Virus record (IMG/VR): IMGVR_UViG_3300045999_010033
Coordinates: 62,001-126,000 of that record
DNA: 64,000 bases
Reading direction: 5' to 3' (one strand)
Shown piece after piece: positions 1,096 to 52,534 of the stretch. Position numbers and translations under genes: made by a program. A model generated the notes under the pieces. It was not told the DNA's origin, made no database searches, and was given only the letters and a program-made list of their open reading frames with translations. Position 1 is the stretch's first letter. Each line of letters begins with the position of its first letter.

Positions 1096-2211
1096 TTAAT
1101 TTGAAAGGGGAAGTTTAATTGCCGGATGTGATTGGTAATTTAATATCTTAATATCGTTTGGTTTATAACACTCCCAATTATCTTTCTTGCAAAGGTAATC
1201 AGGTAATTTATCCAATTTAGGCAAATCATACGGCGTTCTTGTCAATTGCTCTTTCAATCCATCTATGTGATTGAGATAGATGTGACAATCTCCCAAATTA
1301 CCAATCACTTCTTCGGGAATCATATTGACTTCTTTGGCGATAATTTCTAATAGAAGTGCGTAGGATGCGATGTTGAATGGGAGCCCCAATCCCACGTCCA
1401 CTGACCTCTGTGACCAAATTAAAGAGATTGCTCTGGTTGGTATATTATGTTCTGATAATTGTTTTTCTGTGTAATAGAACCTGTAATCTTGAGGTAGCTT
1501 ATCTTTATCAATTACTCCTAAATGCTTATCCATCAACTTCACTCTCTCTGTCTCGTCTAACTCTCTCGTATAAAATTGAAACGAGTAGTGACACGGTGGC
1601 AAGACCATCTGGTCGAGTTCTCCAACATTCCAAGCACTCACAAGTATCCTCCTACTATCAGGGTCTGTCTTCAGTAGGTGAATCGCGTTTGCGATTTGGT
1701 CTGTATATTCGCCCGAACCATTATAATAATCTGCCCAGCTTCTCCATTGGTTACCGTAGATTGGTCCTAATTCTCCCCACATCTTTGCAAACTCATCATC
1801 GGTTTTGATTTTGTTGATGAATTGTTCTTTTGTAAAATGGACATAATTAGGATACCCACTATTAAACTCTAATCCATCAACTTTAAAGTGTTTCTCTCTA
1901 TCATAGAAGGTAATTGATGATATTTGAGTATTTTTATACCGTTTATAAGCATCCCCATCCCAAATATGGCATCCATTATCCACAAGATACTTAATGTTTG
2001 TGGAGCCGCGTAAGAACCACAGAAGTTCGGTCACCATTGTTTTCCATGCCATCTTCTTTGTAGTGAGAAGTGGAAATCCATCCTTCATAGAATGACGTAT
2101 GGTTCTACCAAATACTGATTTAGTTCCAGTACCGGTACGATCTCCTTTAGTGTATCCGTTTTGTAATATGTCTTTGACTAGATCTAAGTATTGTTGCTCT
2201 ATGTTACTCAT
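1096..2211 (-). CDS. thyA: thymidylate synthase with two large insertions
   Basis: DRTGTGT, ELLWFL, LPPCH, QRSVDVGLGLPFNIASY (Asn = dUMP-specific), DCHIY. Confidence 0.97.
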   Translation of the reverse strand: MSNIEQQYLDLVKDILQNGYTKGDRTGTGTKSVFGRTIRHSMKDGFPLLTTKKMAWKTMVTELLWFLRGSTNIKYLVDNGCHIWDGDAYKRYKNTQISSITFYDREKHFKVDGLEFNSGYPNYVHFTKEQFINKIKTDDEFAKMWGELGPIYGNQWRSWADYYNGSGEYTDQIANAIHLLKTDPDSRRILVSAWNVGELDQMVLPPCHYSFQFYTRELDETERVKLMDKHLGVIDKDKLPQDYRFYYTEKQLSEHNIPTRAISLIWSQRSVDVGLGLPFNIASYALLLEIIAKEVNMIPEEVIGNLGDCHIYLNHIDGLKEQLTRTPYDLPKLDKLPDYLCKKDNWECYKPNDIKILNYQSHPAIKLPLSN

Positions 2212-36841: not shown

Positions 36842-36851
36842 ATTGTTTATT

Positions 36852-37147: not shown

Positions 37148-37861
37148 TTAGTTTGAAATTTCGACAAGATAATAACGACAATCAAATTCATCAATTTTGA
37201 ATTGAATATGCGCGAGTCCATTGGCAGATACCATAAGTTTTGCTGCAGATGCTTCTTTATTTGCTGTCAAAATTTCTTTCAAATATTTTGCCGAAAATGA
37301 AATTGGTTGCACTTCGGTTGCATATGATTTTTCACATACAAAAGTAACGCGATTTGTAGAAATTGAACTATAACCAATCGCCATCTTTAAATCTCCATCT
37401 TCAGTAAATACTGTAAAGGTATCAACATCACTCAGAGCACCTTTTGCTTTGATAAATTTATCAATCATCATTGGTGTCATTTCAATTGTGATATCAAAAT
37501 CGGGAAGTGTTTTCAAATCAGGAACCGTAGGAATTACCCCCAAATCTGCAAGTTGATAGCTAGTTTCAGTATTATCTGAACTCAATTTGAGTGATACGGC
37601 TTTATCGTTTTGTGTATCAACTTTTAGTGCAACATCGTTATCCAAAATGCCTAAAAGGTTTTTTAGAAGTGATGTTGTGTAAATTCCAATGTTAAATTCG
37701 GGTTCAGTAAATTTACCCAAATCCACTTCACCTAACATTGTTTTATCATCCGAAATAAAACGTACTGAAAGTTTTTGTTCTTCTGATTTCCATGCAACCG
37801 ATTCAATCAATCCACCCAATGCATACTTTTGAATGAAACGTGTCAAATTTTGTTTGTTCAT
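37148..37861 (-). CDS. gp45: sliding clamp (gp45/PCNA-like)
   Basis: Size, FSAKYLKEI and final YYLV strand; between PolB and clamp loader. Confidence 0.8.
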   Translation of the reverse strand: MNKQNLTRFIQKYALGGLIESVAWKSEEQKLSVRFISDDKTMLGEVDLGKFTEPEFNIGIYTTSLLKNLLGILDNDVALKVDTQNDKAVSLKLSSDNTETSYQLADLGVIPTVPDLKTLPDFDITIEMTPMMIDKFIKAKGALSDVDTFTVFTEDGDLKMAIGYSSISTNRVTFVCEKSYATEVQPISFSAKYLKEILTANKEASAAKLMVSANGLAHIQFKIDEFDCRYYLVEISN

Positions 37862-37890: not shown

Positions 37891-37920
37891 CAATATAAGG
37901 AAAATTTATCAAAATTCAAA
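37891..37920 (-). promoter_or_regulatory. Bacteroidota sigma-type promoter
   Basis: TTTG-N19-TATATTG. Confidence 0.65.
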
Positions 37921-40461
37921 AAATTTCTTAGCCTTTTGCGTTTCAGGAGTTGGTTTCGTCCATTTTAGTGCGTTATAGAAATCATCAATTTTATTATCCA
38001 ATTCTGCTTTATAAATACCCTCTCTATCAATATAGTTGGTTATAAAATCCATTATCTCCTGCGGGTCATTATAATCTCTAAAAGCCACTGCTTCGAGCCC
38101 TAATGGGTTTGTTTTAAGGTACACCCACTTAACTTTATCACCATCACGTATTGGTTCGTGTTTGAATGGGCAGTTGAAAAATTTAAGAAGTCTATTGTAG
38201 GATATTCCTGCTTTTACGTGAGCAGGTGTTCCTTTTTCAAAGTTTGCTACCGTATCTCCTTTTTTCCATCCGGCATCATATTTACTCAATTCTTTAACTG
38301 CTCCACCTTTTGCTATTTTATTTACAGGAACATTGATTAGGTTTTTTTTAAACTCCATAAGTTCACCATCAATATGTTCTTTGGACTTACCCATTAGGAT
38401 TTCTTTTAACATCTTTGCCATAAAATCCTGAAACGCTTTCGGAAACGATGAACGAACCACATCCAATCCTTTAACATCAAGTTTATCACATTTGATTCCA
38501 TTTTTTAGAACCATCCATTGAGCGTAACGTTTCTTTGCTACCCAAAATCCAGCCTTACTAATATATTCCTTTTTAATTTCGAAGCGATGCTTTTCTTTTG
38601 GAATGAAAAAGAATTTCTCTGCAAATATATCGTAAAACTTATTTAGGAATGCCTGCGTTTCTTCTGCAACGGTATTGACTTCTTGTGCCATCCTTTGTTC
38701 ATCAAACTCTTTGTATTCTGGATATCTATGTTTAATCAATGGCTCTGCCATCATATAGATAGAGTCGGTATCAATATAAACATTGTAATCATCTTTTGTT
38801 CCGAGTTCTTTCCAATATTTGATGTTTGCCATTTCCGCCGTTTTCTTAATAACAGTTTGGCCCGTAACAGTAACTGCCTCCGCATTATCAATATCGTAAA
38901 ACCGAAAGGCAGGAAGACCAAGAACACCATACATAGAATTAAGAAGGATTTTCTGAACCAGCTGCCTTTTAGCATAAAATTCATATTTTTCCGTATCGCC
39001 CGCATCACCATACTGCTTTTCTAATTTTCTAAATTCAACACGTTTTTCAAACCAGTCATTTAGAATATCTGCAATAAGGCCCGGTGAATCTTGAGAGTAT
39101 AGAACTCCATTTGCAGCAACACCTAAATTACCATCTATAATTACTTCATTTAATTCTTTTCTATTGTATTCATATTGGCTACCATCTTTTCCAACTAATT
39201 TATAAATCTGGTCTTCACCTTTAATCCATTTCTCTGGATTCCAATTTTGAATTTTACCAACCTTTGTTTCGGGGCTGATATTTAGTGTCATAATGATTGA
39301 TGGGTACAGAGATGTCAAATCCAAGTCATAAATCCAGTCATACTTACCAACGATGGGTTCTTTAACATATGCTCCAATGAACTTTTCCTCATTATTATCT
39401 CGTAGTGCTTGCATCCTTTCTTTTCGGTCCTTTGGTTTGTTGGATGCAACCAGCCCTTTCTTTTTAAGATAAGCAAGACAAGCACCTTCCAACCACTTTG
39501 ATGAAAATATGTAATCTTCATATGGGACAAATCCTGCATGACATACTGCCCTACACAATTCAATGAACTGAAGTTTTTCATCCATTGCTACAATCAATTC
39601 TACATCCACAATGTTATACTCAATAAACTTTTCCAAATCCTTTTCAAAAAGCTCATCAAGATTGCCACCATATTCTACCTTACCTCTGCCAATTTCTTTT
39701 TTAGCTATATAATCCAAAGTGTAACTCGGTTCAAGTGTGTATGTGTAGGTTTTATATAGATTAAGATAATCTAATATATTCACCCCACCGAATGAATACT
39801 TTTGTCTATAAGGTGACCAAAAACATTGACCGATATGTGATAATCTATCTGCGTTTTGTTTACCACAAACGTTTTTAATTCGATTGTAAAGATATGGTAC
39901 ATCAAAAAAATCTATGTTCCAACCAGTTATGATCGTTGGACAAACTTCCTCGTAATAATTAAGGAAAGCAAGTAGGAGATTTTTCTCGTTATCAAAAACG
40001 TGGACGTTAGCCGCCTTATCATTTCTAACAAATTTTTTATTATCATTTTTTATAATTCGGTTTTTATCTAACACAAAAACATCATATTCACCTGCCATTG
40101 AATCGTGTGCGGCAATTGATGTTATTTCATTCATCGCTTGTTCGGTAGAAGGTAATCCCGTATTCATTTCAACTTCAATATCAAACGCCATTATCCGATG
40201 GCCGGTAGAAGGTAAATCCGAATCGTAAATATCTACAAGCACTCTAGTGGTTTCGGGAATATCCGCCTCAAAAAGTTCATCGGTATCATCTTTATCCCAA
40301 CTATGGATACGCGTTAATCTATCACCATACATTGAAAGGTGTTGCCCACGTGGGTCTTTTCTGTATGCATATTTTCTATATGGCATAGTAAAATACCCTT
40401 TTTGGTCATCCCAAATATGCATTGTATTTTTATGACGTTCGTAATATATATTTTGATACAT
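37909..40461 (-). CDS. gp43: family B DNA polymerase with 3'-5' exonuclease
   Basis: FDIE, GWNIDFFD, YNIVD; DLTSLYPS, KILLNSMYG, YIDTDS; C-terminal KKFFEF. Confidence 0.97.
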   Translation of the reverse strand: MYQNIYYERHKNTMHIWDDQKGYFTMPYRKYAYRKDPRGQHLSMYGDRLTRIHSWDKDDTDELFEADIPETTRVLVDIYDSDLPSTGHRIMAFDIEVEMNTGLPSTEQAMNEITSIAAHDSMAGEYDVFVLDKNRIIKNDNKKFVRNDKAANVHVFDNEKNLLLAFLNYYEEVCPTIITGWNIDFFDVPYLYNRIKNVCGKQNADRLSHIGQCFWSPYRQKYSFGGVNILDYLNLYKTYTYTLEPSYTLDYIAKKEIGRGKVEYGGNLDELFEKDLEKFIEYNIVDVELIVAMDEKLQFIELCRAVCHAGFVPYEDYIFSSKWLEGACLAYLKKKGLVASNKPKDRKERMQALRDNNEEKFIGAYVKEPIVGKYDWIYDLDLTSLYPSIIMTLNISPETKVGKIQNWNPEKWIKGEDQIYKLVGKDGSQYEYNRKELNEVIIDGNLGVAANGVLYSQDSPGLIADILNDWFEKRVEFRKLEKQYGDAGDTEKYEFYAKRQLVQKILLNSMYGVLGLPAFRFYDIDNAEAVTVTGQTVIKKTAEMANIKYWKELGTKDDYNVYIDTDSIYMMAEPLIKHRYPEYKEFDEQRMAQEVNTVAEETQAFLNKFYDIFAEKFFFIPKEKHRFEIKKEYISKAGFWVAKKRYAQWMVLKNGIKCDKLDVKGLDVVRSSFPKAFQDFMAKMLKEILMGKSKEHIDGELMEFKKNLINVPVNKIAKGGAVKELSKYDAGWKKGDTVANFEKGTPAHVKAGISYNRLLKFFNCPFKHEPIRDGDKVKWVYLKTNPLGLEAVAFRDYNDPQEIMDFITNYIDREGIYKAELDNKIDDFYNALKWTKPTPETQKAKKFFEF

Positions 40462-40465
40462 TTAA

Positions 40466-42106
40466 TTAAATTAAGTTTTGGTTTGTATAAACAATTGTTG
40501 CGTTCATCCAACCATTTGGTATAAACAAGTCTGCTTTGTGAATTACTTGTATTTTTTCAATTTCATTTAAATTCAATTTACCACTTTTTAAAATACTTTC
40601 CAATTTTTTTGCAAGATTATCACTATTTCCACCATGAACCCAAGTTATAGTTTTAAACTTATGTGGCATAATAATTCTTGCACACAATTCGGTAAGGTGT
40701 TCATCATCCATTTGATTGGATTGCCATTCTTGTAAATGTTTATCGGAAAATGTTAAATCCAATTTGAATAGATACGTGCTATCATCATTTTGAGTTATCT
40801 TATACGAATCAAGATTATTATCGTTTAATAGTTTGTGTGTGTTTAGTATAGTAACCGCGTGTGATACGTGTGATGTATCTTTTAGAATGTTTTTATAATT
40901 TTCAATTTCCGCATCTTCATTCTTTTTGAGTCTAACATTGGATGTATCGGCTAATAAATTATGAAATTTGGCAATCTTTTTAACCAAATCTCTTAACGCG
41001 ATTGGAAACGTCGTATTTCTAAATTTAACTTTTAATCTAGCAAAAGGTATCATCGATTCTGGAGTTAAAACAAATATCCATTTTCTGTTATTATATTCCG
41101 CCGGCCATTGACTAGAATTCGGCCACAAATAAATGGTTGCAATATAAGTACCATCGGGTGATACTACATCTACTGTTGGTTTATCTAACTCTGACAAGTG
41201 TAATGGATGAATGTTTTGTTGCCCATTTGACATTCTATATAGAGTTTGTAATTTGTCAGTTTGAGATTTTCTAATAGTTTCATATGTGAATAAGTTTCCC
41301 ATATATTTTTCACCATCTAAATCAATTATATGCAACATATCACCATCATCAGCCGAGACCTGCTTCATATCAATATAATGCCTTATCAAATTTCCACAAT
41401 TTGATGGAAAATAATAATGTGAAAGTTTATTACTTTGTACAATTTCATCATTTTCAATCAGTTCATATTTCAATTGTTTCCCTATTCTATATTGATATCT
41501 AACTCTAGAAAACTCAATTAGCCCATAATAATCTATTTTAAATGGTAATCCTTTAAATAATTTAGATTTACTATACCAACCATTATAACTTTTCCCTAAC
41601 CCATGCTTTTCAATAAATTCATCAAATTCAACTTCATAAACATCCACAATTATTTTAACCAACGATTTTGTAAATTGTGTGGGTGTTAATGCCTCAATTG
41701 GATCTGTTGTTTCATAATTATATTTAGCAATACGATACTTGTTATCCGGAGTGACGTAGCCTATTTCTTCAAAATAGGAAAAATTATGTGGTGCGATTGA
41801 ACCACCTAATTGCGCCTGACCTACTGATTCACTTGTATTTCTTTTAATTTTACCTAAAGTTTTACCTATAAACTTTGTTTTGAAATCCTCATCGCTGCAC
41901 CTACTACTATTATTTGCTCGTAGTATATAGTAATCACCATCTTTATTTTTTACAATTTGGTTAATAACCATATTACCACCATAGCCTATGGAATTATCAT
42001 CCCATTCACTTAAAAAATTTTGACCGTTTATACCATGCTCATTTGGTTGATTTGCGATAAGAAAAGTTAAATCTTTTGAAAAGGTTTCAGAATACAATTT
42101 TTGCAT
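40466..42106 (-). CDS. putative degenerate GHKL/MORC-like domain + NucS/DUF91-like PD-(D/E)XK nuclease
   Basis: FLSEWDDNSI and VGQAQLGG resemble Bergerat motifs; D...EWQ....DDEHL..L...ITWV resembles ExQ-type restriction-fold nucleases. Confidence 0.5.
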   Translation of the reverse strand: MQKLYSETFSKDLTFLIANQPNEHGINGQNFLSEWDDNSIGYGGNMVINQIVKNKDGDYYILRANNSSRCSDEDFKTKFIGKTLGKIKRNTSESVGQAQLGGSIAPHNFSYFEEIGYVTPDNKYRIAKYNYETTDPIEALTPTQFTKSLVKIIVDVYEVEFDEFIEKHGLGKSYNGWYSKSKLFKGLPFKIDYYGLIEFSRVRYQYRIGKQLKYELIENDEIVQSNKLSHYYFPSNCGNLIRHYIDMKQVSADDGDMLHIIDLDGEKYMGNLFTYETIRKSQTDKLQTLYRMSNGQQNIHPLHLSELDKPTVDVVSPDGTYIATIYLWPNSSQWPAEYNNRKWIFVLTPESMIPFARLKVKFRNTTFPIALRDLVKKIAKFHNLLADTSNVRLKKNEDAEIENYKNILKDTSHVSHAVTILNTHKLLNDNNLDSYKITQNDDSTYLFKLDLTFSDKHLQEWQSNQMDDEHLTELCARIIMPHKFKTITWVHGGNSDNLAKKLESILKSGKLNLNEIEKIQVIHKADLFIPNGWMNATIVYTNQNLI

Positions 42107-42169: not shown

Positions 42170-43009
42170 TTAGAACTTGTAAAGTCCCCCAATATTCCAA
42201 AATAATATAGTACCCTCCAAAGTATCAATGTTTTCTTCTAACCATTTCCATTGCTTAATATCCCAAAATTGATTACATGGAAATGGTGCGGAGTACCCAT
42301 TTAGTCTATTTTCAAAAGGATATTCGGATTTTCGAACATTTATGGGTATGTGTATTCCACTTTTTTTAAGTGTTTTATTAATTGAATGAACCGATGATAC
42401 ACACGTTGACCAAACCTTCTTATTAGTTTTTGGAAAAAAATCTTTTAGTTCTTCTCTATAAAATCCCCTCACTAATCCCGATAGTGTTACGCCACTACCA
42501 CTTGAAACTACTAAATTATCAAAATGTGAAAATGGTAATATCCTATCTGCTAAATAATCCTTATAGTAATCGTGATCAAATGCGTATGGTAACATTTGCC
42601 ATTCGTTTTTATTGGCATCCCTTTTTAAGGAATTATACATTACCTGCATCATGTTTGGTTTAATAGGATTTAAGTGCGTTTTAGGATATGAATTTTTAAT
42701 AAAATCAATATACTCTTTTGATATTTTTTTAGAATCAGGATATGATGCATAAAATTCAATATCCAATTCCTCACATATTGCCGCCAATACCCACGCCGTC
42801 CAACTGCCATCTACTGAAAGATGTGTCAGTGGTCTATCTTTCTTTATATATTTTTTAACCAATTCATACACCGCGGCAGTTTTGCCCCAAGGTGGTAAAA
42901 TTGTACCATCTCCCATTAAATCATCTCTTTTTACCCAAACATCTCTTCCTTTTACTTTATACAATTCCAAAGGTGTGTTCTCATTAAGACCGTTTAATTT
43001 TATGTCCAT
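42170..43009 (-). CDS. fold-type II PLP-dependent enzyme (ACC deaminase/D-cysteine desulfhydrase-like)
   Basis: TPL, VWVKRDDL, PPWGK (PLP Lys), VSSGSGVT, YWD-like FWDIK, LFWNIG. Confidence 0.82.
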   Translation of the reverse strand: MDIKLNGLNENTPLELYKVKGRDVWVKRDDLMGDGTILPPWGKTAAVYELVKKYIKKDRPLTHLSVDGSWTAWVLAAICEELDIEFYASYPDSKKISKEYIDFIKNSYPKTHLNPIKPNMMQVMYNSLKRDANKNEWQMLPYAFDHDYYKDYLADRILPFSHFDNLVVSSGSGVTLSGLVRGFYREELKDFFPKTNKKVWSTCVSSVHSINKTLKKSGIHIPINVRKSEYPFENRLNGYSAPFPCNQFWDIKQWKWLEENIDTLEGTILFWNIGGLYKF

Positions 43010-44505
43010 TTGTAGATTCCTTTATCGTTATTAAATAATTCATCACGCATATGTTTGGGTGAGAATCCATATATTTTCTCAAAATTATCCGATATGACAT
43101 ATGTCAAGTTTTTACGATTTTTAAAATTAATTATAGGGTCGTTGATAATAATATCTTCAATATATGTTTTAAAGTTTGTACCTTTTTGAAAGGCCCGCTT
43201 TTCTTGATCTAATATTTCGTCAGGTAGTTTTCCTCTAAACGCGTTTGCCAGAGGTAATTTCCATTGATTTCCTACCGAAAGAAATTCATTTGGTAAGTTT
43301 GTAGTATAATTTAAAAAATCTACATCAAAAAATGGACAACGCAATTCAATTGTACCGTAATTCATAAAGATTGTATTTCCTCTCAATAAGTTACCGTAGT
43401 ATTGTTTTTCAAACAACTTTTTTCGAATATCACTCCAATCGGGTTTTTTGCTAAACATTCTGAACATACCATATGATCCGTACGCCTCATCTGAGCCTTC
43501 ACCACTAAACGCAACTTTGATGCCATCCTTTGCCATTTGTTCGGCAATAAATGATTGTAAAACTCCCACTTCCATCTGAACCGTTGATGGGTATTCAATA
43601 ACTTTTATAGATTCAAGAAACCTTTGCTTTATTATAGCATCATCTTTCGGTACAAAAACTTCAACAAGTTCTATCCCCAAATATTTGGCACAAACTCTTG
43701 CTTTTTGCAAATCTTTTGATGATTGGTCAAACGCAATCGTATATGCTTTAAGATTTGGTATCCGCTTAGATAATAGGTAAGTAATTACTGCAGAATCGAT
43801 TCCACCACTCAGAGAAGTTGCAATCGGGACATCCGATAATAATCTCTTATCTACTGCAGTTTCCAATAACTTAAATGTTGTTTCCGAAACGTCTTCGTGT
43901 GATGTTGCTTCGGTTGGTGTTTCTGAAAAAGAAAAATAGTAATCACTGCATACTTTTAATTTATTTGTATCAAGATTAATTTCTACAAGAGAATTTTTTG
44001 GTACAAATTTAATTTCAGAACTTCTATATTTTGTTGCGATTGCCTTTATTTCACTTGCAATTATATATTCGTTTTTGTTCAGGATATATAATGGTAGTTT
44101 CCCAACCCAATCTCTAGATAAAATCAATTTATTTTTATCGTAAATAACAAAAGAAAACATACCAGTTAACCTGCGTAGTTCGTTTTCTTTATATAAAAAC
44201 AATATTATTTCCGAATCTGAATTTGATTTAAACGTATATCCTCTCTTTTCATATTCTAATCTGAGTTCCGGATAATTCCATATTTCTCCATTTACTATTA
44301 ACCAAGTATTTTCATATTGCATTGGTTGGTTACCCGATTCGGATATATCATTTATAGACAATCGATTGTGTCCTAATATTATTTTTTTATCTTTGTATGT
44401 AAATTCTTGAATACCTCTATTATCTTTGCCACGATGCTCAATCTCGTTAAGCATTGTGTTTACATCATCTTTACTACAACCAATTGTTGCAACAATTCCA
44501 CACAT
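43000..44505 (-). CDS. asnB: asparagine synthetase B-like glutamine amidotransferase/ATP-dependent amide ligase
   Basis: MCGI, HRG, HNRLSI, GNQPM, NGEIWN, SDSE, SLSGGIDS, SGEGSDE, ELRCPF. Confidence 0.92.
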   Translation of the reverse strand: MCGIVATIGCSKDDVNTMLNEIEHRGKDNRGIQEFTYKDKKIILGHNRLSINDISESGNQPMQYENTWLIVNGEIWNYPELRLEYEKRGYTFKSNSDSEIILFLYKENELRRLTGMFSFVIYDKNKLILSRDWVGKLPLYILNKNEYIIASEIKAIATKYRSSEIKFVPKNSLVEINLDTNKLKVCSDYYFSFSETPTEATSHEDVSETTFKLLETAVDKRLLSDVPIATSLSGGIDSAVITYLLSKRIPNLKAYTIAFDQSSKDLQKARVCAKYLGIELVEVFVPKDDAIIKQRFLESIKVIEYPSTVQMEVGVLQSFIAEQMAKDGIKVAFSGEGSDEAYGSYGMFRMFSKKPDWSDIRKKLFEKQYYGNLLRGNTIFMNYGTIELRCPFFDVDFLNYTTNLPNEFLSVGNQWKLPLANAFRGKLPDEILDQEKRAFQKGTNFKTYIEDIIINDPIINFKNRKNLTYVISDNFEKIYGFSPKHMRDELFNNDKGIYKWT

Positions 44506-44506
44506 A

Positions 44507-45205
44507 TTATTTATTTAATATTTTTAGTAACTCTATGGTTTTTTTCTTTTCGTCGTTCATAGTTCCTATGTGGCAGGAACATGCCAATACTGATACTTTT
44601 TCTAAAGTCAATCCACTTTCTCTAGCTAAGAATTTTCCCATACTTACTAATGCAGAATAATCTGCGTATCCACTTTTAGATACTCGGTTTGAACGTAATA
44701 TTGATGTCAAATATAACTTTCCATTTCTTGGTTTAAGATCAATTGCAATCATACATGGTTGTGAATATTGATTTTTTGCATCACGAAGTGGTTCGTAAAT
44801 GATTAATTCACACCTTTTTACTGCCTTGCCAGTTTTTAATATTTTGATTACATTTTCTACTTGATTAAAAGCACCATTCCAAGATACCATTCTTCCCCAA
44901 TAGCTATCGTACCATTTATCTTTTATAAAAGAATATTCAAGTCCTTCTTCTTCACTGAAGAACTGATTATCGGATTTTTTCATTTGTGGTTCTACAAATG
45001 TTACTGATGAGGCAAAATCAATTCTATCATCTCCCATTATTTGCCTGAAGTGTGGGTCAAACCAATCATCGTTTTGAAATGTGGTTATCTCTGTCATAAC
45101 ATTTAGCTCTTCGGTCAAATCACCTACTTTAATTCCATTTTCTAAAAGATGCTTGGATACTTTTACCCATGCATCGCCAGGAGAAACTGCTTGAATAACT
45201 GTCAT
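44507..45205 (-). CDS. divergent thymidylate-synthase-fold enzyme, predicted cytosine-directed
   Basis: SYWGR, NQ, PC catalytic Cys, RSNRVSKSGYAD (Asp at TS Asn177 position), SCHIG. Confidence 0.8.
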   Translation of the reverse strand: MTVIQAVSPGDAWVKVSKHLLENGIKVGDLTEELNVMTEITTFQNDDWFDPHFRQIMGDDRIDFASSVTFVEPQMKKSDNQFFSEEEGLEYSFIKDKWYDSYWGRMVSWNGAFNQVENVIKILKTGKAVKRCELIIYEPLRDAKNQYSQPCMIAIDLKPRNGKLYLTSILRSNRVSKSGYADYSALVSMGKFLARESGLTLEKVSVLACSCHIGTMNDEKKKTIELLKILNK

Positions 45206-45210
45206 TTTGT

Positions 45211-46782
45211 TTATGGTTTATAAAATACAAAAATAGGTTCGTATTTGTATGATTGTCCTTCTATTTGCATACTATTTTTTGCTTTAGATAAATCCATACC
45301 TGTCATAGGACTCATTGTCATTTTTATTTTACCCCGATATTCACACCCCAATTCGGTAAGAATGTTAATACTATCTTGTTCAAGTGGATACCATTTATCG
45401 GGTCCTACTTTTATATCTGCAATGTTCCAACAAATATATCTATCATTTCTCAAATATTCAAAAGCGGTAGTTAACGTGGGTTTCAAAAATCCATCTCTCC
45501 AACTTTCATAGTTGTTAAATTTCTTAAATGATTGGGTATCATCATCGGAATATCTTTCTCTATCAAAATATGGTGGAGATGTAAAAACAAAATCCAATTT
45601 GCCTTTATATTTTTGAAATCTTACTTCATTGTGAATTATTTCAGACCCGGTTGTAAAAATATCATAGGTATTCGCGTGACCCCAAAATGAGTTAGCTGCT
45701 CCAGGTACTTTGTTATTAAAAAACTCCGCAAGGTATTCATATCTTGTTTTTCCTATTTCAGGAATCCAATTTTCGGTATTAGGGTCGTTTCCAATATAGT
45801 GGATATTTCTATCATCAATAGAAAGAGCACCCAATATTCTTCCACCCCATCCTGCCGACGGGTCGTAGATGTTAATAACTTTTTGATTTTTTATATGGGT
45901 TGTGAATCTTTGATATAAATATTTTGCAGTAAGTGGTGGAAAGTTTACCACCGCTTGTGTTCCCATTCCAATACGAAATGCGGCAGTGGCTTCAGGAAAT
46001 ATTCTTTGCCCTAATGGATAGATTTTTATTTGAATTGGTTGCTTTGGTAAATCAACCAAATTATCTATATTTTCACCCCAGTCGGCGGTTCTAAGTGATG
46101 AAATATTTTCATATTTTAAGATACCCTCCTTATAAAGTTCTTTTACCTCTTGCGCGGTGATTGGTGCAGATGGCACTTTACTATCTGCTTGTGAAAGGCA
46201 AAACCCATAACCTTCTTTTTTATCCCCATTCGCCCATTTTATTATCCATTCTTTGCCACTTTGAATATGAGAGTTATGGAATTCGGGATTATTAATATGT
46301 AGTGTTTTTGAAAACCTATACATACCATCTTGGCGGGTCAACCTTCTCATTTGTTTAATGAATTCTGGCAAGTAAGTATCATCTGAAAATACATCGTATA
46401 TCGATGGTTTTGGCTTTTCGTAAGTAGAACCACCAATTCCAGTTTTATACATTGCTGGAAAAAATTGATTTACCGGTGTAGCAAATTTATTAAAGTTAAA
46501 AATTACTTCATCGCCATTATCATCTTTTTCTTCAAACTCATTTACTTTGTAAGTTTGTAGTTTTGAAAATTGTTCAATCATTTCTGATTCATCTACCCCA
46601 ATCCGAGGAGGTGCACCGGTTTCATTCCATTTTCTTACTGCCAATTCTCTGAAAAATGCTACCCATTCTTCAAATTGTTTGAATGGCATTTTAAGAACAT
46701 CTTCATAAAGTAAGTTTACTTCAGGTTCGTACAACCAATCATTTTTTTCGTAAAAATATTTTTTTGAATAATTGAAGCCCAT
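45211..46782 (-). CDS. amino-group DNA methyltransferase-like protein (SPPY)
   Basis: NFPP, YDPSAGWGGR (motif I), FTSPPYF..E.YS (motif IV), WNIAD, EPIF. Confidence 0.85.
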   Translation of the reverse strand: MGFNYSKKYFYEKNDWLYEPEVNLLYEDVLKMPFKQFEEWVAFFRELAVRKWNETGAPPRIGVDESEMIEQFSKLQTYKVNEFEEKDDNGDEVIFNFNKFATPVNQFFPAMYKTGIGGSTYEKPKPSIYDVFSDDTYLPEFIKQMRRLTRQDGMYRFSKTLHINNPEFHNSHIQSGKEWIIKWANGDKKEGYGFCLSQADSKVPSAPITAQEVKELYKEGILKYENISSLRTADWGENIDNLVDLPKQPIQIKIYPLGQRIFPEATAAFRIGMGTQAVVNFPPLTAKYLYQRFTTHIKNQKVINIYDPSAGWGGRILGALSIDDRNIHYIGNDPNTENWIPEIGKTRYEYLAEFFNNKVPGAANSFWGHANTYDIFTTGSEIIHNEVRFQKYKGKLDFVFTSPPYFDRERYSDDDTQSFKKFNNYESWRDGFLKPTLTTAFEYLRNDRYICWNIADIKVGPDKWYPLEQDSINILTELGCEYRGKIKMTMSPMTGMDLSKAKNSMQIEGQSYKYEPIFVFYKP

Positions 46783-46798
46783 GTTGATTAATTATAAT

Positions 46799-46830
46799 TA
46801 AATATATGATTTATTATTGTATTTTACAAA
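46799..46830 (-). promoter_or_regulatory. Bacteroidota sigma-type promoter for the MTase-TS-AsnB-PLP operon
   Basis: TTTG-N20-TATATTTA. Confidence 0.65.
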
Positions 46831-48063
46831 TCATTTTTGCCAAATCCATATGGGTTCACCAAAGGCATGATTTTTTGTTTGTTCTGCTTTTTCTTTAAAT
46901 TCATCTGAAAAATAATCAGAAGCGGCTGTGCCTGCTCCACCACTATTTGGTCGTTTTGTCATTTCCATGCCTATACATCCCCTATAAGTAAGCCCTTTTG
47001 ATTCCAAAAAATCATTCATGGGGTTTACGATGGGAACATATCCTTTATCAGGAGATGAATATACATCGGATATGTTTATTGCCAAAATTCCATTTGTTTT
47101 TATTGTTGGTATGATTTTGTCAAGTGTTTTGTGTAAAAAATTTTTATTCCAATCATCAACTGATTTATATCTAACCCAGCTTTGGGTATCATCGTATGAA
47201 TATTTTTCAGTATTGAAATATGGTGGTGAAGTAAAAACTGTATCAAAAAAGTTTTCAAATCTAGAATAGTCTAAGTCTTCCGCAGGAGATTCTATCATTT
47301 CTGCAGTTTTTTCATTTTCAAAAAAAGTTTTATTCTTTTTATAAAATTCAATTTGTTTTTTATAACCTTCGGTGTTTGTCTTATTTGGATCTATTCCAAC
47401 ATAATTCTTTCCATATTCACTTGCAAAAAATCCACAAAGTCTATCTCCCCATCCTGCCGAAAAATCTAATATATTTTCAGATTTAAAGTAATCATAAAAC
47501 GCCTTTGCAATAGCCGGTTTAAATTGAGCAGGTACATACTTTCTCATCTGAATGGCTAATATGATATTTTTTTTATTTACCATATCTAAACTTTGTTCAA
47601 GTGTAAAGAACGCCCGAACAACAGTTCGTATACCTTTTGGTGTTTGCCATGTTTTCCACGGAGAGGGCATTCTAATCCAATCAACTTTGTGTCTGGTTTG
47701 AATATGAAATATATTAGATGCCTTATTACCGGTAATTGTTTTTTTAAAAAACATTGGTTTACCACCGAATGTTAAATCATATGCTGAATTATTTTCGTTT
47801 CTTGGAAACCATTCACCTTCTACAAGGATGTCTGGCCACCATGTCCCTTTTAATTTTCTAAAATCCTCCAATACTTCATCGGCGGTTAGTTCAGGAAATG
47901 GATATGGATATGTAAACAACACTTCTGAAATCTCTTCTACTATTTCTTCTTTTTCCCAAGTTTTTTTTATCCAATCCCATTCTTCCTTTTCAATGGTAAG
48001 ATATGGGTGCATCCCATAAAACTTTTTGAAATAATCTTTTATTGTAACTTTTTGAGAAGACAT
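46831..48063 (-). CDS. amino-group DNA methyltransferase-like protein (SPPY)
   Basis: QFKP, LDFSAGWGDR, FTSPPYF..E.YS, INISD, EPIW. Confidence 0.85.
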   Translation of the reverse strand: MSSQKVTIKDYFKKFYGMHPYLTIEKEEWDWIKKTWEKEEIVEEISEVLFTYPYPFPELTADEVLEDFRKLKGTWWPDILVEGEWFPRNENNSAYDLTFGGKPMFFKKTITGNKASNIFHIQTRHKVDWIRMPSPWKTWQTPKGIRTVVRAFFTLEQSLDMVNKKNIILAIQMRKYVPAQFKPAIAKAFYDYFKSENILDFSAGWGDRLCGFFASEYGKNYVGIDPNKTNTEGYKKQIEFYKKNKTFFENEKTAEMIESPAEDLDYSRFENFFDTVFTSPPYFNTEKYSYDDTQSWVRYKSVDDWNKNFLHKTLDKIIPTIKTNGILAINISDVYSSPDKGYVPIVNPMNDFLESKGLTYRGCIGMEMTKRPNSGGAGTAASDYFSDEFKEKAEQTKNHAFGEPIWIWQK

Positions 48064-48576: not shown

Positions 48577-49459
<883 letters not shown>

Positions 49460-51322
49460 TTACATAGTTGTAACAACACACGCGCCACCTGCACATGCTG
49501 CTTCCCCATTTAAATCCGTATTATCATCTAATTCAATAATCTGACGTAAATCAATAGAGCTCAATGTTTGCAATAATCTTTCATATTCTTCTTTAGTACA
49601 ATCTTCAAAAGGAGCTTGAATATAGCTACCACCATCATATGGTAAAACTGATAAACCATTGTACGCATCTTTGTTTTCCCACATCCATTCTCCAACTGCT
49701 TTCCATTCATGCTCTCTGATTGATACCGTTGCAGATACATTGTGCGTGTTATTACCAGTTCGATGTCCTGGTTTAATCCATTCATTATGGACGCGTTTTA
49801 CTCTTTCCAATAGTTGAATTGGAGATTCGGTTCTAAATATTGCGGTTTCAGGTGCCTTTTGTGGAATTGAAATTACTGCAGTATCGTGTGGGCGGAAATA
49901 TTCATCTTCAATTAATTCGGGATGGTTCAATAGTAGGTATTGATAAATTGCTTCATTTTTACCCACTCTCACTCTACGAATATAATAATCATTGTGCCAA
50001 GCATGAATACCTGATGATGTTCCTAATGTCAATGATGTAGTTCCTGCAGGTTTAACTGTCGTGGTTCTTGCCGAGTGATTTATTCCTAACAAATCTGCTA
50101 TTCTAGCATTTTCATCTTTTACAACCTTTGCGGCCTCTTTCATATTAAATTTTAAAACAGCTCCGCTGCCAATTCCTGTCATAGATACACCAATAAGCGC
50201 ATCTTTTTCTGTCGTTCTTTGCCAAATTGGACGAAGGTAGTGGAAATCAGTGTAGCCGGCTTGTAGTGTTCCAATAAACGCGGCAGCCTTAACTCGTTCA
50301 TTTAACTCTTCTTGCGTTTGAACATCCGATACATTTACTTCACAAAGGTTACAAAATTGGAAAGGTCTAAGAGCGATTTCACAACAAGGGTTTGTCCCCC
50401 AATCCTTATCGTTACTTAAATAAATACCCGGCTCACCTGCTCCACTTGCTTCAATACGTTTCCACAAATCCATAAAGTATTCCTTTGTGATTTTGTGTCT
50501 CATTAAAACTGCTGAATTGTTTGCACGTCCACGTTGTGAATTTTGTTCCCACCATGCACCACTTTTACAACTAATCATTTCATCATCAGTCGCAGAAAAC
50601 AACGAAATCAATGCGGCTCTACGAATGCCACCTGCCAATACTGCATCTGCAATATGACAAACTATATCATGCACTTCTATGGGTCTGAGTTTATCTCCAT
50701 CATTTTTGGCATCGAGAATGCCTTCTAATTTAATTAAGCATTCTTTTAGTGGTTGAGGGCCGGGGGCTTTACCACCTGAAGTAATTAATCTTGCACCTTT
50801 TGGACGAATATCTCTAAAATCAAATAGAGGTTTACTACCACCGAAAAAGTATGCTTTAACTAATATAGATACTGCATCTGCCCATCCTTCAATGGAATCA
50901 CCGATAAGAAATCTTCTAGTCTTATCCGGATTTGGTTTTCTGATTTCTGGAAGTTGATCTACATGGTGTTTTTGAACTGAGTAACCTACTCCGGTCCCAC
51001 CTAATAGTAAGAACATGATTTCTGAAAATACTCGGTAATCATCAACCGGTGCATACGCACAATTATAAATGCGATTAGGACTTATTTCAATTGGCTTTCC
51101 TGCAAATTGCATAGAACGCATTGATGGTAAAACTTTTTTATCATACACAAATTTATAAGTAGAACGTATTTCAGATTCTAATTGTGGATATTTTTTAATG
51201 TGCATATCCATGTTGCGTGTAACCAATTCTTCCCAAGTTTCTCTGCGGGAAAATTCAGGAATGTATTTGGCGTATTTCATATACACCGTAATATCCGATA
51301 AAATTTGTGTTGAGATATCCAT
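49460..51322 (-). CDS. nrdJ: class II (adenosylcobalamin-dependent) ribonucleotide reductase, monomeric RTPR type
   Basis: YNC, AGGIRRAA, TNPCCEI, FCNL, VKPAGTTS, C-terminal ACAGGAC; no beta subunit nearby. Confidence 0.93.
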   Translation of the reverse strand: MDISTQILSDITVYMKYAKYIPEFSRRETWEELVTRNMDMHIKKYPQLESEIRSTYKFVYDKKVLPSMRSMQFAGKPIEISPNRIYNCAYAPVDDYRVFSEIMFLLLGGTGVGYSVQKHHVDQLPEIRKPNPDKTRRFLIGDSIEGWADAVSILVKAYFFGGSKPLFDFRDIRPKGARLITSGGKAPGPQPLKECLIKLEGILDAKNDGDKLRPIEVHDIVCHIADAVLAGGIRRAALISLFSATDDEMISCKSGAWWEQNSQRGRANNSAVLMRHKITKEYFMDLWKRIEASGAGEPGIYLSNDKDWGTNPCCEIALRPFQFCNLCEVNVSDVQTQEELNERVKAAAFIGTLQAGYTDFHYLRPIWQRTTEKDALIGVSMTGIGSGAVLKFNMKEAAKVVKDENARIADLLGINHSARTTTVKPAGTTSLTLGTSSGIHAWHNDYYIRRVRVGKNEAIYQYLLLNHPELIEDEYFRPHDTAVISIPQKAPETAIFRTESPIQLLERVKRVHNEWIKPGHRTGNNTHNVSATVSIREHEWKAVGEWMWENKDAYNGLSVLPYDGGSYIQAPFEDCTKEEYERLLQTLSSIDLRQIIELDDNTDLNGEAACAGGACVVTTM

Positions 51323-51475: not shown

Positions 51476-52534
51476 TTACACTTTCTTATCAAAAACAAAT
51501 ATGGGCTCCAATTTAATTCCATTACCCGAAACCGATGATAACACCAAATACAAAATATCAGTTTTAATAAATCCCACCGCTTCTGCCATGTTGATTGTTT
51601 CTGCTTCAATACCAACATATTTGGGTGTATTTGCAATATTTATCATCATTTTTCCGGTAGGTTTTAATCCTTTATGACAATTTATCATGGTTTGTTTTAA
51701 GAACCCATTCATCCAATCCCTTTGATTTGGAAATTTTTTATATGACTGTGTATCTTCATCCGAATACTTTTCAGTATCAAAATACGGTGGAGATGTGAAG
51801 CATAAATCTAAACTCTCGGTATCGGGTACAAATTCTTCAGATCCAATTTTATGCAGTAATATCTGCTTATTAAAGAGGTTTAATTCATCTCGTAGTGATA
51901 CTAACCCTTCGTATGTTTTAGTTGAAGGATCAGTTCCTATATAGGTTTTACATCTACTTGTAAGAAATCCTGTCAATCTGCCACCCCATCCACAACTCAT
52001 ATCCCAAACAATCTCACCACCATAGGTATTATATATCCATTTAGCCACCGATGGTCTGAAATTACTGACGGACTGGTTTCCTCCATATATCTTAAAATTT
52101 TGCCTCAATCGATTTAAGGTAAATTTTCCATTACCATGTTTCAATTGCCAAGTCCAAGTTTTTTTAATTATTTCTTTTAATTTATCATCATTGTTCCAAT
52201 ATTCAATCGGTTTCATTTTACTTGAACCACATATAACATCAACCCAATGTGGAAAATAAGACCAAGCAAGAGATAGACAGTGCATGGTTTGCTGTAATTG
52301 ATTCCCCTTACAAATAGTAGATTCATCAAACGAAATCAAAGATTTTAGTTGATTCAGTTTTTCATGCTTTGGTACATTGTAGTGTGGAAATCCTCTACGC
52401 CTATGATATCTAAATATCACATCTTCTGCGTAATCCCTATCGGTTATAGAAAATATATCCGATATGATTCGGTGATATTCCAATTCCAATTCATCAACAT
52501 CCACAAATTTTGAAAAAGCAGTGTAGTTTATCAT
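51476..52534 (-). CDS. amino-group DNA methyltransferase-like protein (SPPY)
   Basis: NFRP, WDMSCGWGGR, FTSPPYF..EKYS, INIAN, EPIF. Confidence 0.85.
   Translation of the reverse strand: MINYTAFSKFVDVDELELEYHRIISDIFSITDRDYAEDVIFRYHRRRGFPHYNVPKHEKLNQLKSLISFDESTICKGNQLQQTMHCLSLAWSYFPHWVDVICGSSKMKPIEYWNNDDKLKEIIKKTWTWQLKHGNGKFTLNRLRQNFKIYGGNQSVSNFRPSVAKWIYNTYGGEIVWDMSCGWGGRLTGFLTSRCKTYIGTDPSTKTYEGLVSLRDELNLFNKQILLHKIGSEEFVPDTESLDLCFTSPPYFDTEKYSDEDTQSYKKFPNQRDWMNGFLKQTMINCHKGLKPTGKMMINIANTPKYVGIEAETINMAEAVGFIKTDILYLVLSSVSGNGIKLEPIFVFDKKV

What the first reader, a model, noticed from the sequence alone, without database searches (positions are those of the whole stretch)
44507..45205. TS-fold enzyme with cytosine specificity residue but an apparently lost folate site
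Aligning RSNRVSKSGYAD with TS RSxDxxLGLPFN and T4 gp42 RSNDVVFGFRND puts Asp at the Asn177 position, the known dCMP-over-dUMP determinant. The catalytic PC is kept. The folate-contacting Asp of RSxD is Arg, the ExxW helix is missing, and the Tyr of HxY (which binds the sugar 3'-OH) is Gly. Inference: it activates cytosine via a Cys adduct but uses a non-folate, possibly carboxylate, co-substrate. It may accept a 3'-substituted or in-DNA nucleotide.
Basis: partly seen in the sequence, partly recalled or inferred. Interest (0 to 1): 0.8.

Follow-up and report, generated by a model that had tools for sequence, protein, structure and literature searches.

The report
Cytosine-type TS-fold enzyme, folate residues lost
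A lake-water phage carries, besides a normal thymidylate synthase, a second enzyme of the same fold that looks built to attack cytosine but lacks the residue all folate-using relatives keep. It sits in a conserved four-gene set that probably makes an undescribed modified cytosine in phage DNA.

Summary
ORF 44507-45205 (-) encodes a 232-aa thymidylate-synthase-fold protein (model pLDDT 94.5). Its nearest solved folds are MilA CMP hydroxymethylase and the flavin-dependent dCMP hydroxylase AfhB.

Three independent alignments agree on the register:
- P150-C151 = catalytic Pro-Cys
- R171-S172 = Arg166-Ser167
- D182 = Asn177
- R174 = Asp169
- G214 = Tyr209

The signature at positions 177/143/169 is D/(S,G)/(R,A). 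It matches none of the three characterised classes. One Arg sits either at 174 or at 214, never both, and it moved at least twice in the family tree.

The family is under purifying selection, is essentially virus-only, and is separate from the phage's ordinary ThyA (1096-2211). It always lies in an operon with three partners: TSPPY methyltransferase-like genes, an Asn-synthetase-like amidotransferase, and a full-length homologue of phage M6 gp52. M6 gp52 is the PLP decarboxylase of amino-acid:nucleobase conjugates in DNA. Some lineages fuse a B12-type radical SAM domain to the TS-like or the MTase-like protein.

Best reading: a Cys-dependent cytosine-C5 enzyme that starts a new cytosine hypermodification pathway, probably without folate and with a side chain that carries a carboxylate or amino acid. 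The co-substrate, and whether the substrate is a free nucleotide or DNA, remain inferred.

The parts
44507..45205 (-). Divergent thymidylate-synthase-fold protein, 232 aa. Key codons: C151 44753-44755, R174 44684-44686, K177 44675-44677, D182 44660-44662, H212 44570-44572, G214 44564-44566.
43000..44505 (-). Asn-synthetase-like glutamine amidotransferase, 501 aa. It has an Ntn Cys2 GATase domain and a PP-loop synthetase domain. It starts 1 nt after the TS-like stop codon.
   Evidence: Pfam Asn_synthase 3e-42 and GATase_7 2.5e-32; TIGR01536 295 bits; present in 44/45 well-flanked loci
42170..43009 (-). PLP fold-type-II enzyme, 279 aa, a full-length homologue of phage M6 gp52 (PLP-dependent decarboxylase of amino-acid:nucleobase conjugates in DNA). 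Invariant K43 and an SGSGVT loop. Overlaps the preceding gene by 10 nt.
   Evidence: phrog_7093 3.6e-23; tblastn to M6 gp52; hhalign Prob 99.8, E 1.9e-29; phmmer 2.8e-21; alignment A4; 43/45 loci
45211..46782 (-). Class I SAM-methyltransferase-like protein, 523 aa, with motif I DPSAGWGGR and motif IV FTSPPYF. Immediately upstream of the TS-like gene.
   Evidence: Pfam N6_N4_Mtase 1e-4; phrog_498/12517; motifs; nearest annotated phage hits are N4-cytosine or adenine DNA methylases; 45/45 loci
46831..48063 (-). Paralogous TSPPY methyltransferase-like protein, 410 aa.
   Evidence: AF2 model pLDDT 92.5; Foldseek gives only the generic class I MTase domain (CmoB-like, Trm11)
51476..52534 (-). Third paralogue of the TSPPY methyltransferase-like family, 352 aa.
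   Evidence: BLAST and HMM clustering
1096..2211 (-). The phage's canonical ThyA, 371 aa. It keeps QRSVDVGLGLPFNIASY, so Asp169 and Asn177 are present. Not part of the module; it shows the TS-like gene is not the phage's dTMP source.
   Evidence: PF00303 314 bits; PDB TS hits at 1e-75

Best explanation
The ORF encodes a catalytically competent, cytosine-directed member of the thymidylate-synthase fold. It is the signature enzyme of a virus-only four-gene operon: TSPPY methyltransferase-like, TS-like, Asn-synthetase-like amidotransferase, and an M6-gp52-type PLP decarboxylase. Some lineages add a B12-type radical SAM enzyme.

Proposed mechanism:
1. Cys151 adds to C6 of a cytosine nucleotide. 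The nucleotide is held by R171/S172/K130 at the phosphate and by D182 at N3/N4.
2. The activated C5 attacks an electrophile that is not the methylene-tetrahydrofolate iminium, because the pterin-binding Asp169 is replaced by Arg or Ala.
3. The new pocket (invariant K177, Y180, R105, W103, plus one Arg at position 174 or 214) holds an anionic co-substrate.
4. The installed side chain carries a carboxylate or alpha-amino-acid function.
5. The neighbours then amidate it (Asn-synthetase-like), decarboxylate it (gp52-like, on DNA) and N-methylate it (TSPPY enzymes). The result is a hypermodified cytosine in virion DNA.

Shown here: the fold, the residue register, conservation, the operon, and homology of the PLP enzyme to a characterised DNA-hypermodification decarboxylase.

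Inferred: cytosine as the substrate (from Asp182), independence from folate, the nature of the side chain, the order of steps, and a mononucleotide rather than DNA as the TS-like substrate. I favour a mononucleotide, at about 60:40.
For: Fold and register.

Invariant residues C151, R171, S172, D182, H212, K177 and Y180.

The signature at positions 177/143/169 is D/(S,G)/(R,A). Compare TS N/L/D, dCMP or CMP hydroxymethylases D/(D,E)/D, and 5-hydroxy-dCMP synthases D/E/N (PMC13326640).

The wider short-TS clade keeps RSxD, Asn or Asp at 177, and SAHIY. The losses are therefore specific to this family.

Arg swap: 130 sequences with R174 never have R214, and all sequences with A174 have R214. The tree shows the switch happened at least twice.

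Purifying selection.

A separate canonical ThyA is present.

Operon conservation in 45 well-flanked loci: MTase-like 45, AsnS-like 44, PLP 43. The same holds in lineages only 36-50% identical.

Fusions: TS-like + radical SAM and radical SAM + MTase-like.

The PLP enzyme is homologous to M6 gp52. Its published activity is decarboxylation of amino-acid:thymine conjugates in DNA (PMC8989533).

One locus adds a true PdxH.

The family is virus-only: one hit, on a MAG contig, in 185,579 species genomes.
Against: No biochemical data exist for any member.

Every characterised TS-fold enzyme uses either folate or a flavin and acts on mononucleotides. A third co-substrate class has no precedent.

The Asn177-to-Asp rule was established in classical TS and T4-type enzymes, not in this clade.

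The TS-like enzyme could supply only a simple handle, with the carboxylate coming from another step.

The amidotransferase and the decarboxylase would compete for one carboxylate unless the side chain has two, or the pathway branches.

No dCTPase, MazG or dCMP deaminase was found to exclude ordinary dC.

Complex prediction of the TS-like dimer with the MTase-like protein gave no answer.
Confidence: 0.5

Rival explanations
1. It is still a folate- (or other pterin-) dependent dCMP hydroxymethylase or methylase. It supplies 5-hydroxymethyl- or 5-methyl-dC as a handle. The neighbours then elaborate the handle on DNA, as in the 5-hmdU-based thymidine pathways.
For: This is the established paradigm: T4 gp42, and the dUMP hydroxymethylases upstream of the M6 and ViI pathways (PMC8989533). 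MilA is the closest solved structure. Short methanogen-type TS proteins also lack Trp80/Trp83 and are still taken to be pterin-dependent.
Against: Asp169 is Arg or Ala and is not conserved. All characterised folate-dependent members, and the rest of the short-TS clade, keep Asp there. The Leu143 position is Ser/Gly, not the Asp/Glu of hydroxymethylases. No 5-hmU/5-hmC DNA kinase or amino-acid:DNA transferase homologue is in the genome or in 84 loci.
Confidence: 0.22
2. It is a flavin-dependent dCMP C5-hydroxylase like AfhB and RB69 gp48. It makes 5-hydroxy-dCMP, whose hydroxyl group is then alkylated.
For: AfhB (9iqc/9iqu) is the best profile hit in the PDB (E 1.5e-8) and the second-best fold match. 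That class shows that changing Asp169 goes with a change of cofactor. CmoB-like folds are among the MTase-like protein's weak structural hits.
Against: The diagnostic Asn at position 169 and Glu at position 143 are both absent. Position 174 is not even conserved in chemistry, being Arg or Ala. There are no glycosyltransferase or NDP-sugar genes in the module. The neighbours need a carboxylate or amino acid, which hydroxylation does not provide.
Confidence: 0.1
3. It acts after replication on cytosine within DNA. It would be the C6-thiolate engine that stands in for the missing amino-acid:DNA transferase, with the co-varying Arg binding the 3'-phosphodiester.
For: Tyr209, the 3'-OH ligand, is lost. 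The Arg21 segment is deleted and Arg127 is not conserved. One Arg alternates between positions 174 and 214. The partner PLP enzyme's homologue works on DNA. There are domain fusions linking the TS-like protein, radical SAM and the DNA-methylase-like protein. No dCTPase was found.
Against: No TS-fold enzyme is known to flip a base out of DNA. R171/S172/K130 still form a phosphate site typical of mononucleotide binding. Isoelectric points vary from 6 to 10 with no consistent basic surface. The MTase-like model resembles small-molecule and tRNA methyltransferases as much as DNA methylases.
Confidence: 0.18

Closest known systems
MilA, CMP 5-hydroxymethylase of mildiomycin biosynthesis (PDB 5b6d, 5jnh)
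   Same: TS fold. Best Foldseek match (E 8e-12, TMq 0.69). Catalytic Cys, Arg-Ser phosphate pair and Asp at the Asn177 position are shared. It is cytosine-specific.
   Different: MilA keeps Asp169 (RAND), Asp at the Leu143 position and His-x-Tyr, and it uses methylene-tetrahydrofolate. It is 325 aa with extra elements. Sequence identity is about 17%.
AfhB / RB69 gp48 / DLP3 gp80, flavin-dependent 5-hydroxy-dCMP synthases (PDB 9iqc, 9iqu)
   Same: Short phage TS-fold enzymes of about 235 aa, with Asp at position 177 and a non-Asp residue at position 169. They set the precedent that this fold can abandon folate. Best profile hit in the PDB (E 1.5e-8).
   Different: Their signature is Asn169 plus Glu143, and they work with glycosyltransferases. 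Here the residues are Arg/Ala and Ser/Gly, with K177 and Y180 invariant, and the partners are an amidotransferase, a PLP decarboxylase and methyltransferase-like proteins.
Methanogen-type (short) thymidylate synthase, TIGR03283
   Same: Best whole-length family match (E 2.6e-19 over residues 3-214). Same compact architecture without the Trp80/Trp83 region.
   Different: The score of 69.6 bits is far below the 174.55-bit cut-off. Those proteins keep RSxD, Asn177 and SAHIY, and are often fused to MtrA-like and pterin-binding domains.
Thymidine hypermodification clusters of phages M6, ViI and PaMx11
   Same: A TS-family enzyme upstream. Shares a homologous PLP decarboxylase (M6 gp52). Uses C6-thiolate chemistry to work at C5. 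Radical SAM enzymes are optional. Metagenomic variants with amidoligase or glutaminotransferase domains have been noted (PMC8989533).
   Different: The target base is inferred to be cytosine, not thymine. No 5-hmdU DNA kinase, no aGPT-Pplase-type amino-acid:DNA transferase and no SPL-like radical SAM enzyme. It has instead an Asn-synthetase-like enzyme and TSPPY methyltransferase-like proteins.
Diphthamide biosynthesis (Dph2, Dph5, Dph6). Analogy only, recalled from general knowledge.
   Same: The same set of enzyme types: radical SAM-type alkyl transfer, N-methylation, and ATP-dependent PP-loop amidation of a carboxylate on an appended amino-acid side chain.
   Different: The proteins are unrelated and the target is different (a His residue in a protein). 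No homology was tested. It is a lead, not a result.

Membership tests
Thymidylate synthase ThyA (PF00303, EC 2.1.1.45) | Score at or above the Pfam gathering threshold | tested here: not met
   23.7 bits against a 24.3-bit cut-off, and only residues 98-213 match
Thymidylate synthase ThyA (PF00303, EC 2.1.1.45) | TS fold with catalytic Cys in a Pro-Cys motif and the Arg166-Ser167 phosphate pair | tested here: met
   Model and Foldseek; P150-C151 and R171-S172 invariant
Thymidylate synthase ThyA (PF00303, EC 2.1.1.45) | Asn177 (dUMP specificity) and Asp169 (pterin contact) | tested here: not met
   D182 and R174 at these positions. The phage's real ThyA has both residues.
dCMP/CMP hydroxymethylase (T4 gp42, MilA) | Asp at position 177 | tested here: met
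   D182 is invariant
dCMP/CMP hydroxymethylase (T4 gp42, MilA) | Acidic residue at the Leu143 position, and Asp169 retained | tested here: not met
   S148 (Gly/Ser in the family) and R174 (Arg/Ala in the family). Criteria from PMC13326640.
dCMP/CMP hydroxymethylase (T4 gp42, MilA) | Methylene-tetrahydrofolate-dependent hydroxymethyl transfer | not testable with these tools
   Needs an enzyme assay
5-hydroxy-dCMP synthase (AfhB, RB69 gp48) | Diagnostic Asn at position 169, with Glu at position 143 | tested here: not met
   Arg/Ala and Ser/Gly. Criterion from PMC13326640.
Methanogen-type thymidylate synthase TIGR03283 | Score at or above the curated cut-off | tested here: not met
   69.6 bits against 174.55 bits
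M6 gp52-type PLP decarboxylase (the neighbour at 42170-43009) | Full-length homology, with the Schiff-base Lys and the PFPCN...FWN(I/L)G signature | tested here: met
   hhalign Prob 99.8, E 1.9e-29, 260 columns. K43 is invariant.
5-hmdU-type thymidine hypermodification cluster | 5-hmU DNA kinase plus an aGPT-Pplase-type amino-acid:DNA transferase | tested here: not met
   No match to M6 gp54 or gp51 in the genome or in 84 related loci. These were single-sequence searches only, so distant homologues could be missed.

The most novel reading that the evidence does not exclude
This would be the first TS-fold enzyme to form a C-C bond at cytosine C5 with neither folate nor flavin. The Cys151-activated C5 would attack an amino-acid-type electrophile. 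Two candidates are an iminium formed between the invariant Lys177 and glyoxylate or another 2-oxo/aldehyde acid (Lys taking the role of folate N5), or the aminocarboxypropyl carbon of SAM. The amino-acid side chain would then be amidated, decarboxylated and N-methylated into a cationic, diphthamide-like cytosine in the DNA of abundant lake and marine phages.
Probability: 0.25. Interest if true: 0.9.

Novelty: new variant of a known kind. Interest (0 to 1): 0.72.

Why it matters
TS-fold enzymes are textbook folate enzymes. The recent flavin-dependent 5-hydroxy-dCMP synthases showed that the fold can change cofactor, and that a single active-site residue (position 169) reports the change. This family shows a third state of that residue and a rebuilt pocket.

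It also anchors a conserved operon with no described product, in phages found in lake metagenomes from at least 15 studies. If confirmed, three things follow:
- a new chemistry for C5 functionalisation of cytosine
- a new hypermodified DNA base relevant to restriction and CRISPR evasion
- a cytosine counterpart to the amino-acid-derived thymidine hypermodifications

It also gives a simple sequence rule (177/143/169 plus the SKSGYAD motif) for sorting TS homologues in viromes that are now all annotated as 'thymidylate synthase'.

Tried and rejected
1. DNA-level search of the module against cultured phages found no match. Protein-level hits of the TS-like protein in cultured phages are only distant short TS homologues.

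2. I first thought the PLP enzyme and the radical SAM enzyme were mutually exclusive and tracked the R174 versus A174 types. With 78 more loci this failed and I dropped it.

3. The radical SAM gene elsewhere in the window (22009-23538) is not the orthologue of the module-linked radical SAM enzyme. The module-linked one is not related to M6 gp53.

4. Complex prediction of the TS-like dimer with the adjacent MTase-like protein returned 'no answer'. It is not evidence either way.

5. The fold search of the MTase-like model gave only the generic class I methyltransferase domain, so it does not settle DNA versus small-molecule substrate.

6. Isoelectric points do not indicate a DNA-binding surface.

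7. The single 710-aa TS-like + amidotransferase ORF in L058 may be an indel artefact. An Ntn glutaminase needs a free N-terminal Cys, and the two genes are in different frames in the window. I did not use it as evidence.

8. The 484-aa 'fusion' in L065 is a GIY-YIG/NUMOD3 homing endonuclease lying upstream in frame. It is not a functional clue.

9. Literature searches found no paper on this family or operon. The 2013 Iyer et al. paper could not be fetched.

10. No RNA run was listed for the genes. The VIA structural aligner was unavailable.

11. Model coordinates are not exposed, so the distance between positions 174 and 214 and the pocket geometry could not be measured.
Full report
**What is at the coordinates**

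The window is bases 62001-126000 of a 221,095-bp IMG/VR virus record. The record has 35% G+C and 253 of 276 called ORFs are on the minus strand. It is T4-like in its replication genes:
- family-B polymerase, 37909-40461
- sliding clamp, 37148-37861
- PhoH, 48577-49335
- a B12-type ribonucleotide reductase, 49460-51322

The closest cultured polymerase is that of Microcystis phage Mel-JY01, at 48.6% identity. Near-identical DNA is present in at least 20 lake-water or freshwater metagenome runs from at least 15 studies.

The finding's coordinates are exactly an ATG-started ORF of 232 aa on the minus strand.

**Checking the observation**

The protein scores just under the Pfam threshold for thymidylate synthase: 23.7 against 24.3 bits, C-terminal half only. 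It matches the methanogen-type short TS model TIGR03283 over its whole length, at E 2.6e-19. That is far below the model's cut-off, 69.6 against 174.55 bits.

An AlphaFold2 model built on a 68-sequence alignment is confident (pLDDT 94.5, pTM 0.91). Foldseek against the PDB finds three groups of matches:
- MilA CMP hydroxymethylase (E 8e-12, TMq 0.69)
- the phage HY126 flavin-dependent dCMP hydroxylase AfhB (E 2e-11)
- classical TS enzymes

Three independent alignments give one register: phmmer to MilA, a family profile to AfhB and MilA, and hhalign to the phage's own canonical ThyA.

| This protein | E. coli TS |
|---|---|
| Y102 | Tyr94 |
| K130-R131 | Arg126-Arg127 |
| S148 | Leu143 |
| P150-C151 | Pro145-Cys146 |
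| M152 | His147 |
| R171-S172 | Arg166-Ser167 |
| R174 | Asp169 |
| K177 | Leu172 |
| D182 | Asn177 |
| H212 | His207 |
| G214 | Tyr209 |

**Is it a working gene, and is the pattern a family trait?**

There are 208 homologues in the 5.8-billion-protein collection, most of them 68-88% identical and full length. An exhaustive HMMER scan finds only about 13 clusters at the 50% identity level that belong to the family proper (E < 1e-30). Beyond these lies a long tail of other short TS-like proteins.

Across 14 members of 33-76% identity, these residues are invariant: G24, F53, G58, F70, P73, R105, N114, Q115, K130, P150, C151, P159, R171, S172, K177, G179, Y180, D182, H212 and E219.

Against orthologues, synonymous sites are saturated while dN is 0.15-0.21, giving dN/dS of about 0.05-0.16.

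A scan of one genome for each of 185,579 prokaryotic species found a single hit, on a MAG contig. The family is in effect virus-only.

**What is specific to the family and what is not**

In the broader short-TS clade, the methanogen-type proteins read RSxD...N and SAHIY. They keep Asp169, Asn177 and Tyr209, and carry an Arg-containing insertion (D-ERG) where Arg21 lies. Several small sister groups have Asp at 177 but still keep Asp169 and Tyr209. None of these proteins has the Trp80/Trp83 region. Some are fused to MtrA-like and pterin-binding domains.

Four changes are specific to this family:
- loss of Asp169 (Arg or Ala)
- loss of Tyr209
- deletion of the Arg21 segment
- the invariant SK(S/A)GY(A/G)D motif

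A 2026 paper gives a practical signature (PMC13326640):

| Class | Position 177 | Position 143 | Position 169 |
|---|---|---|---|
| TS | N | L | D |
| dCMP/CMP hydroxymethylases | D | D/E | D |
| Flavin-dependent 5-hydroxy-dCMP synthases | D | E | N |
| This family | D | S/G | R/A |

This is a fourth state. The Asn177-to-Asp determinant for cytosine is documented in that paper and in PMC8670742.

**A co-varying arginine**

Among 135 family sequences, every one with Arg at 174 lacks Arg at 214. Every one with Ala at 174 has Arg at 214. The rule held in all 78 further viral loci.

A maximum-likelihood tree has these features:
- It is rooted with Asp169-bearing short TS proteins.
- The family is monophyletic (support 100/99).
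- The Ala174/Arg214 forms appear as a basal grade plus one nested clade.
- The Arg therefore moved between the two sites at least twice.

Positions 169 and 209 both border the nucleotide in classical TS. From established TS structures, as I recall them, Asp169 contacts the pterin and its backbone contacts O2, and Tyr209 contacts the 3'-OH. The family therefore needs one cationic group in that region. It could bind either an anionic co-substrate or a 3'-phosphate. I could not measure the geometry because model coordinates are not exposed.

**The phage has an ordinary ThyA as well**

ORF 1096-2211 (-) is a canonical ThyA, with 314 bits to PF00303 and PDB TS hits at 1e-75. It has QRSVDVGLGLPFNIASY, so both Asp169 and Asn177 are present. 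There is also a dUTPase at 36416-36862. No ThyX, MazG or dCMP deaminase was found. The TS-like gene is therefore not the phage's dTMP source.

**The neighbourhood**

In transcription order the window reads:
1. TSPPY methyltransferase-like, 410 aa (46831-48063)
2. TSPPY methyltransferase-like, 523 aa (45211-46782)
3. TS-like (44507-45205)
4. Asn-synthetase-like glutamine amidotransferase, 501 aa (43000-44505)
5. PLP fold-II enzyme, 279 aa (42170-43009)
6. an unassigned 546-aa ORF
7. the polymerase

A third methyltransferase paralogue lies at 51476-52534.

I collected 84 loci and classified their ORFs with family HMMs. Of these, 45 have at least 5 kb on both sides:

| Partner | Loci out of 45 |
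|---|---|
| Methyltransferase-like | 45 |
| Asn-synthetase-like | 44 (32 with the glutaminase domain) |
| PLP enzyme | 43 |

The genes are on the same strand, usually with overlapping stop and start codons. Many loci are close relatives of each other. The same set recurs, however, in lineages whose TS-like protein is only 36-50% identical to the query (L011, L067-type, L084-type, L089, L090).

Eight loci add a B12-binding-type radical SAM enzyme. In one locus it is fused to the TS-like domain (P0127, 676 aa). In another it is fused to the methyltransferase-like domain (L062, 801 aa). One locus adds a genuine PdxH (PLP synthase, 238 bits) and another adds an ATP-grasp-like protein.

**What the partners are**

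All methyltransferase-like proteins keep DxSxGWGxR and F(T/S)SPPYF. T-S-P-P-Y is, from my recollection of the PROSITE N4-methylase pattern, typical of N4-cytosine methylases. Their nearest annotated phage relatives are called N4-cytosine or adenine DNA methylases. A confident model (pLDDT 92.5) matches only generic class I methyltransferase domains, such as CmoB-like and Trm11, at low TM.

The PLP protein is the key link. It is a full-length homologue of Pseudomonas phage M6 gp52:
- tblastn to M6, and the M6 annotation
- hhalign Prob 99.8, E 1.9e-29, 260 columns
- phmmer 2.8e-21
- an invariant Lys43 aligned to gp52 Lys36, and a conserved glycine loop

M6 gp52 and ViI gp226 were shown experimentally to decarboxylate amino-acid:thymine conjugates in DNA (PMC8989533).

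The other M6 enzymes have no detectable homologue in this genome or in the 84 loci. Those are the 5-hmdU DNA kinase, the amino-acid:DNA transferase and the SPL-like radical SAM isomerase.

**How it most likely works**

The evidence fits a cytosine counterpart of the amino-acid-derived thymidine hypermodifications, built from different parts.

In the M6 and ViI pathways, a kinase activates the 5-substituent. A thiolate enzyme then attacks C6 to do chemistry at C5. Here the ATP-using enzyme is a PP-loop adenylating amidotransferase, which needs a carboxylate. The C6-thiolate enzyme is the TS-like protein.

I therefore propose the following:
1. Cys151 adds to C6 of a cytosine nucleotide.
2. C5 attacks a non-folate electrophile held by the rebuilt, cationic pocket (K177, Y180, R105, W103, and Arg174 or Arg214).
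3. The installed group carries a carboxylate or alpha-amino-acid function.
4. The neighbours then process that group: amidation, PLP-dependent decarboxylation on DNA, and N-methylation.

Which electrophile is used is not known. Candidates are a Lys177-bound iminium of glyoxylate or a similar acid, SAM (methyl or aminocarboxypropyl), and CO2. All of this last step is inference.

Whether the TS-like protein works on the free nucleotide or on DNA is also open. I favour the nucleotide, because every known member of the fold does so and a phosphate site is retained.

**Rivals**

1. A still folate-dependent hydroxymethylase that supplies a handle. This is the paradigm, but the Asp169 and Leu143-position evidence and the missing kinase and transferase argue against it.
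2. An AfhB-like flavin hydroxylase. The fold is similar, but the diagnostic Asn169 and Glu143 are absent and the partners do not fit.
3. Action on DNA. This is compatible with the lost 3'-OH ligand, the Arg swap and the domain fusions, but it has no precedent.

**Novelty**

No paper describing this family or operon was found. PMC8989533 mentions only that metagenomic thymidine-type clusters sometimes carry amidoligase or glutaminotransferase domains.

I class this as a new variant of a known kind: TS-superfamily pyrimidine-C5 enzymes that feed phage DNA hypermodification. There is a real chance that the chemistry is new.

Noticed in passing
window 1096-2211 (-): The canonical ThyA is 371 aa. 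It has an insertion of about 45 residues (roughly residues 217-262) between the catalytic Cys strand and the RSxD motif, which PDB thymidylate synthases lack.
   Followed up: partly
window 45211-46782, 46831-48063, 51476-52534 (-): There are three paralogous TSPPY methyltransferase-like genes with different N-terminal domains. Related phages carry one to five copies; L086 has five. This could mean several sequence specificities or successive methylations.
   Followed up: partly
window 22009-23538 (-): A 509-aa radical SAM protein lies 21 kb from the module. It is only remotely similar to the module-linked B12-type radical SAM enzymes of other phages. Its role is unknown.
   Followed up: partly
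window 40466-42106 (-): A 546-aa ORF between the PLP enzyme and the DNA polymerase has no hit in Pfam, PHROGs or NCBIfam. It is conserved in only 6 of the 84 loci.
   Followed up: partly
L062:4486-6888 and L003:7088-9118: Natural domain fusions exist: radical SAM + TSPPY methyltransferase-like (801 aa), and TS-like + radical SAM (676 aa). They tie the three activities together.
   Followed up: partly
L058:10001-12130: A single 710-aa ORF joins the TS-like protein to the glutamine amidotransferase. It may be an assembly indel, since the glutaminase needs a free N-terminal Cys.
   Followed up: no
L008:6766-7944 and 8825-9361; L065:9233-10000; L063:12190-12813: Mobile elements interrupt or abut the module in some phages: a TnpB/IS605-type gene and an HNH-like gene in L008, and GIY-YIG/NUMOD3 homing endonucleases in L065 and L063.
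   Followed up: no
L006:1-4259 and L007:856-2787: A run of three or four paralogous ADP-ribosyltransferase-like genes (Pfam ADPrib_exo_Tox) lies a few kb upstream of the module. They are probably Alt/Mod-type phage enzymes.
   Followed up: no
L011:10402-11013: A genuine pyridoxamine-5'-phosphate oxidase (PdxH, 238 bits) lies directly after the PLP enzyme. This suggests the phage tops up the cofactor.
   Followed up: partly
window 42170-48063: This stretch is held nearly identically (sampled-word share 0.4-1.0) in at least 20 lake or freshwater DNA runs from at least 15 studies. The phage is widespread, and its DNA is sequenced by ordinary library methods.
   Followed up: partly
L092 (MAG contig CAIOZA010000025.1): This is the only hit among 185,579 species genomes. 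It is a 44-kb contig binned with an uncultured Ignavibacteria MAG. It may be a phage contig or a hint about the host.
   Followed up: no
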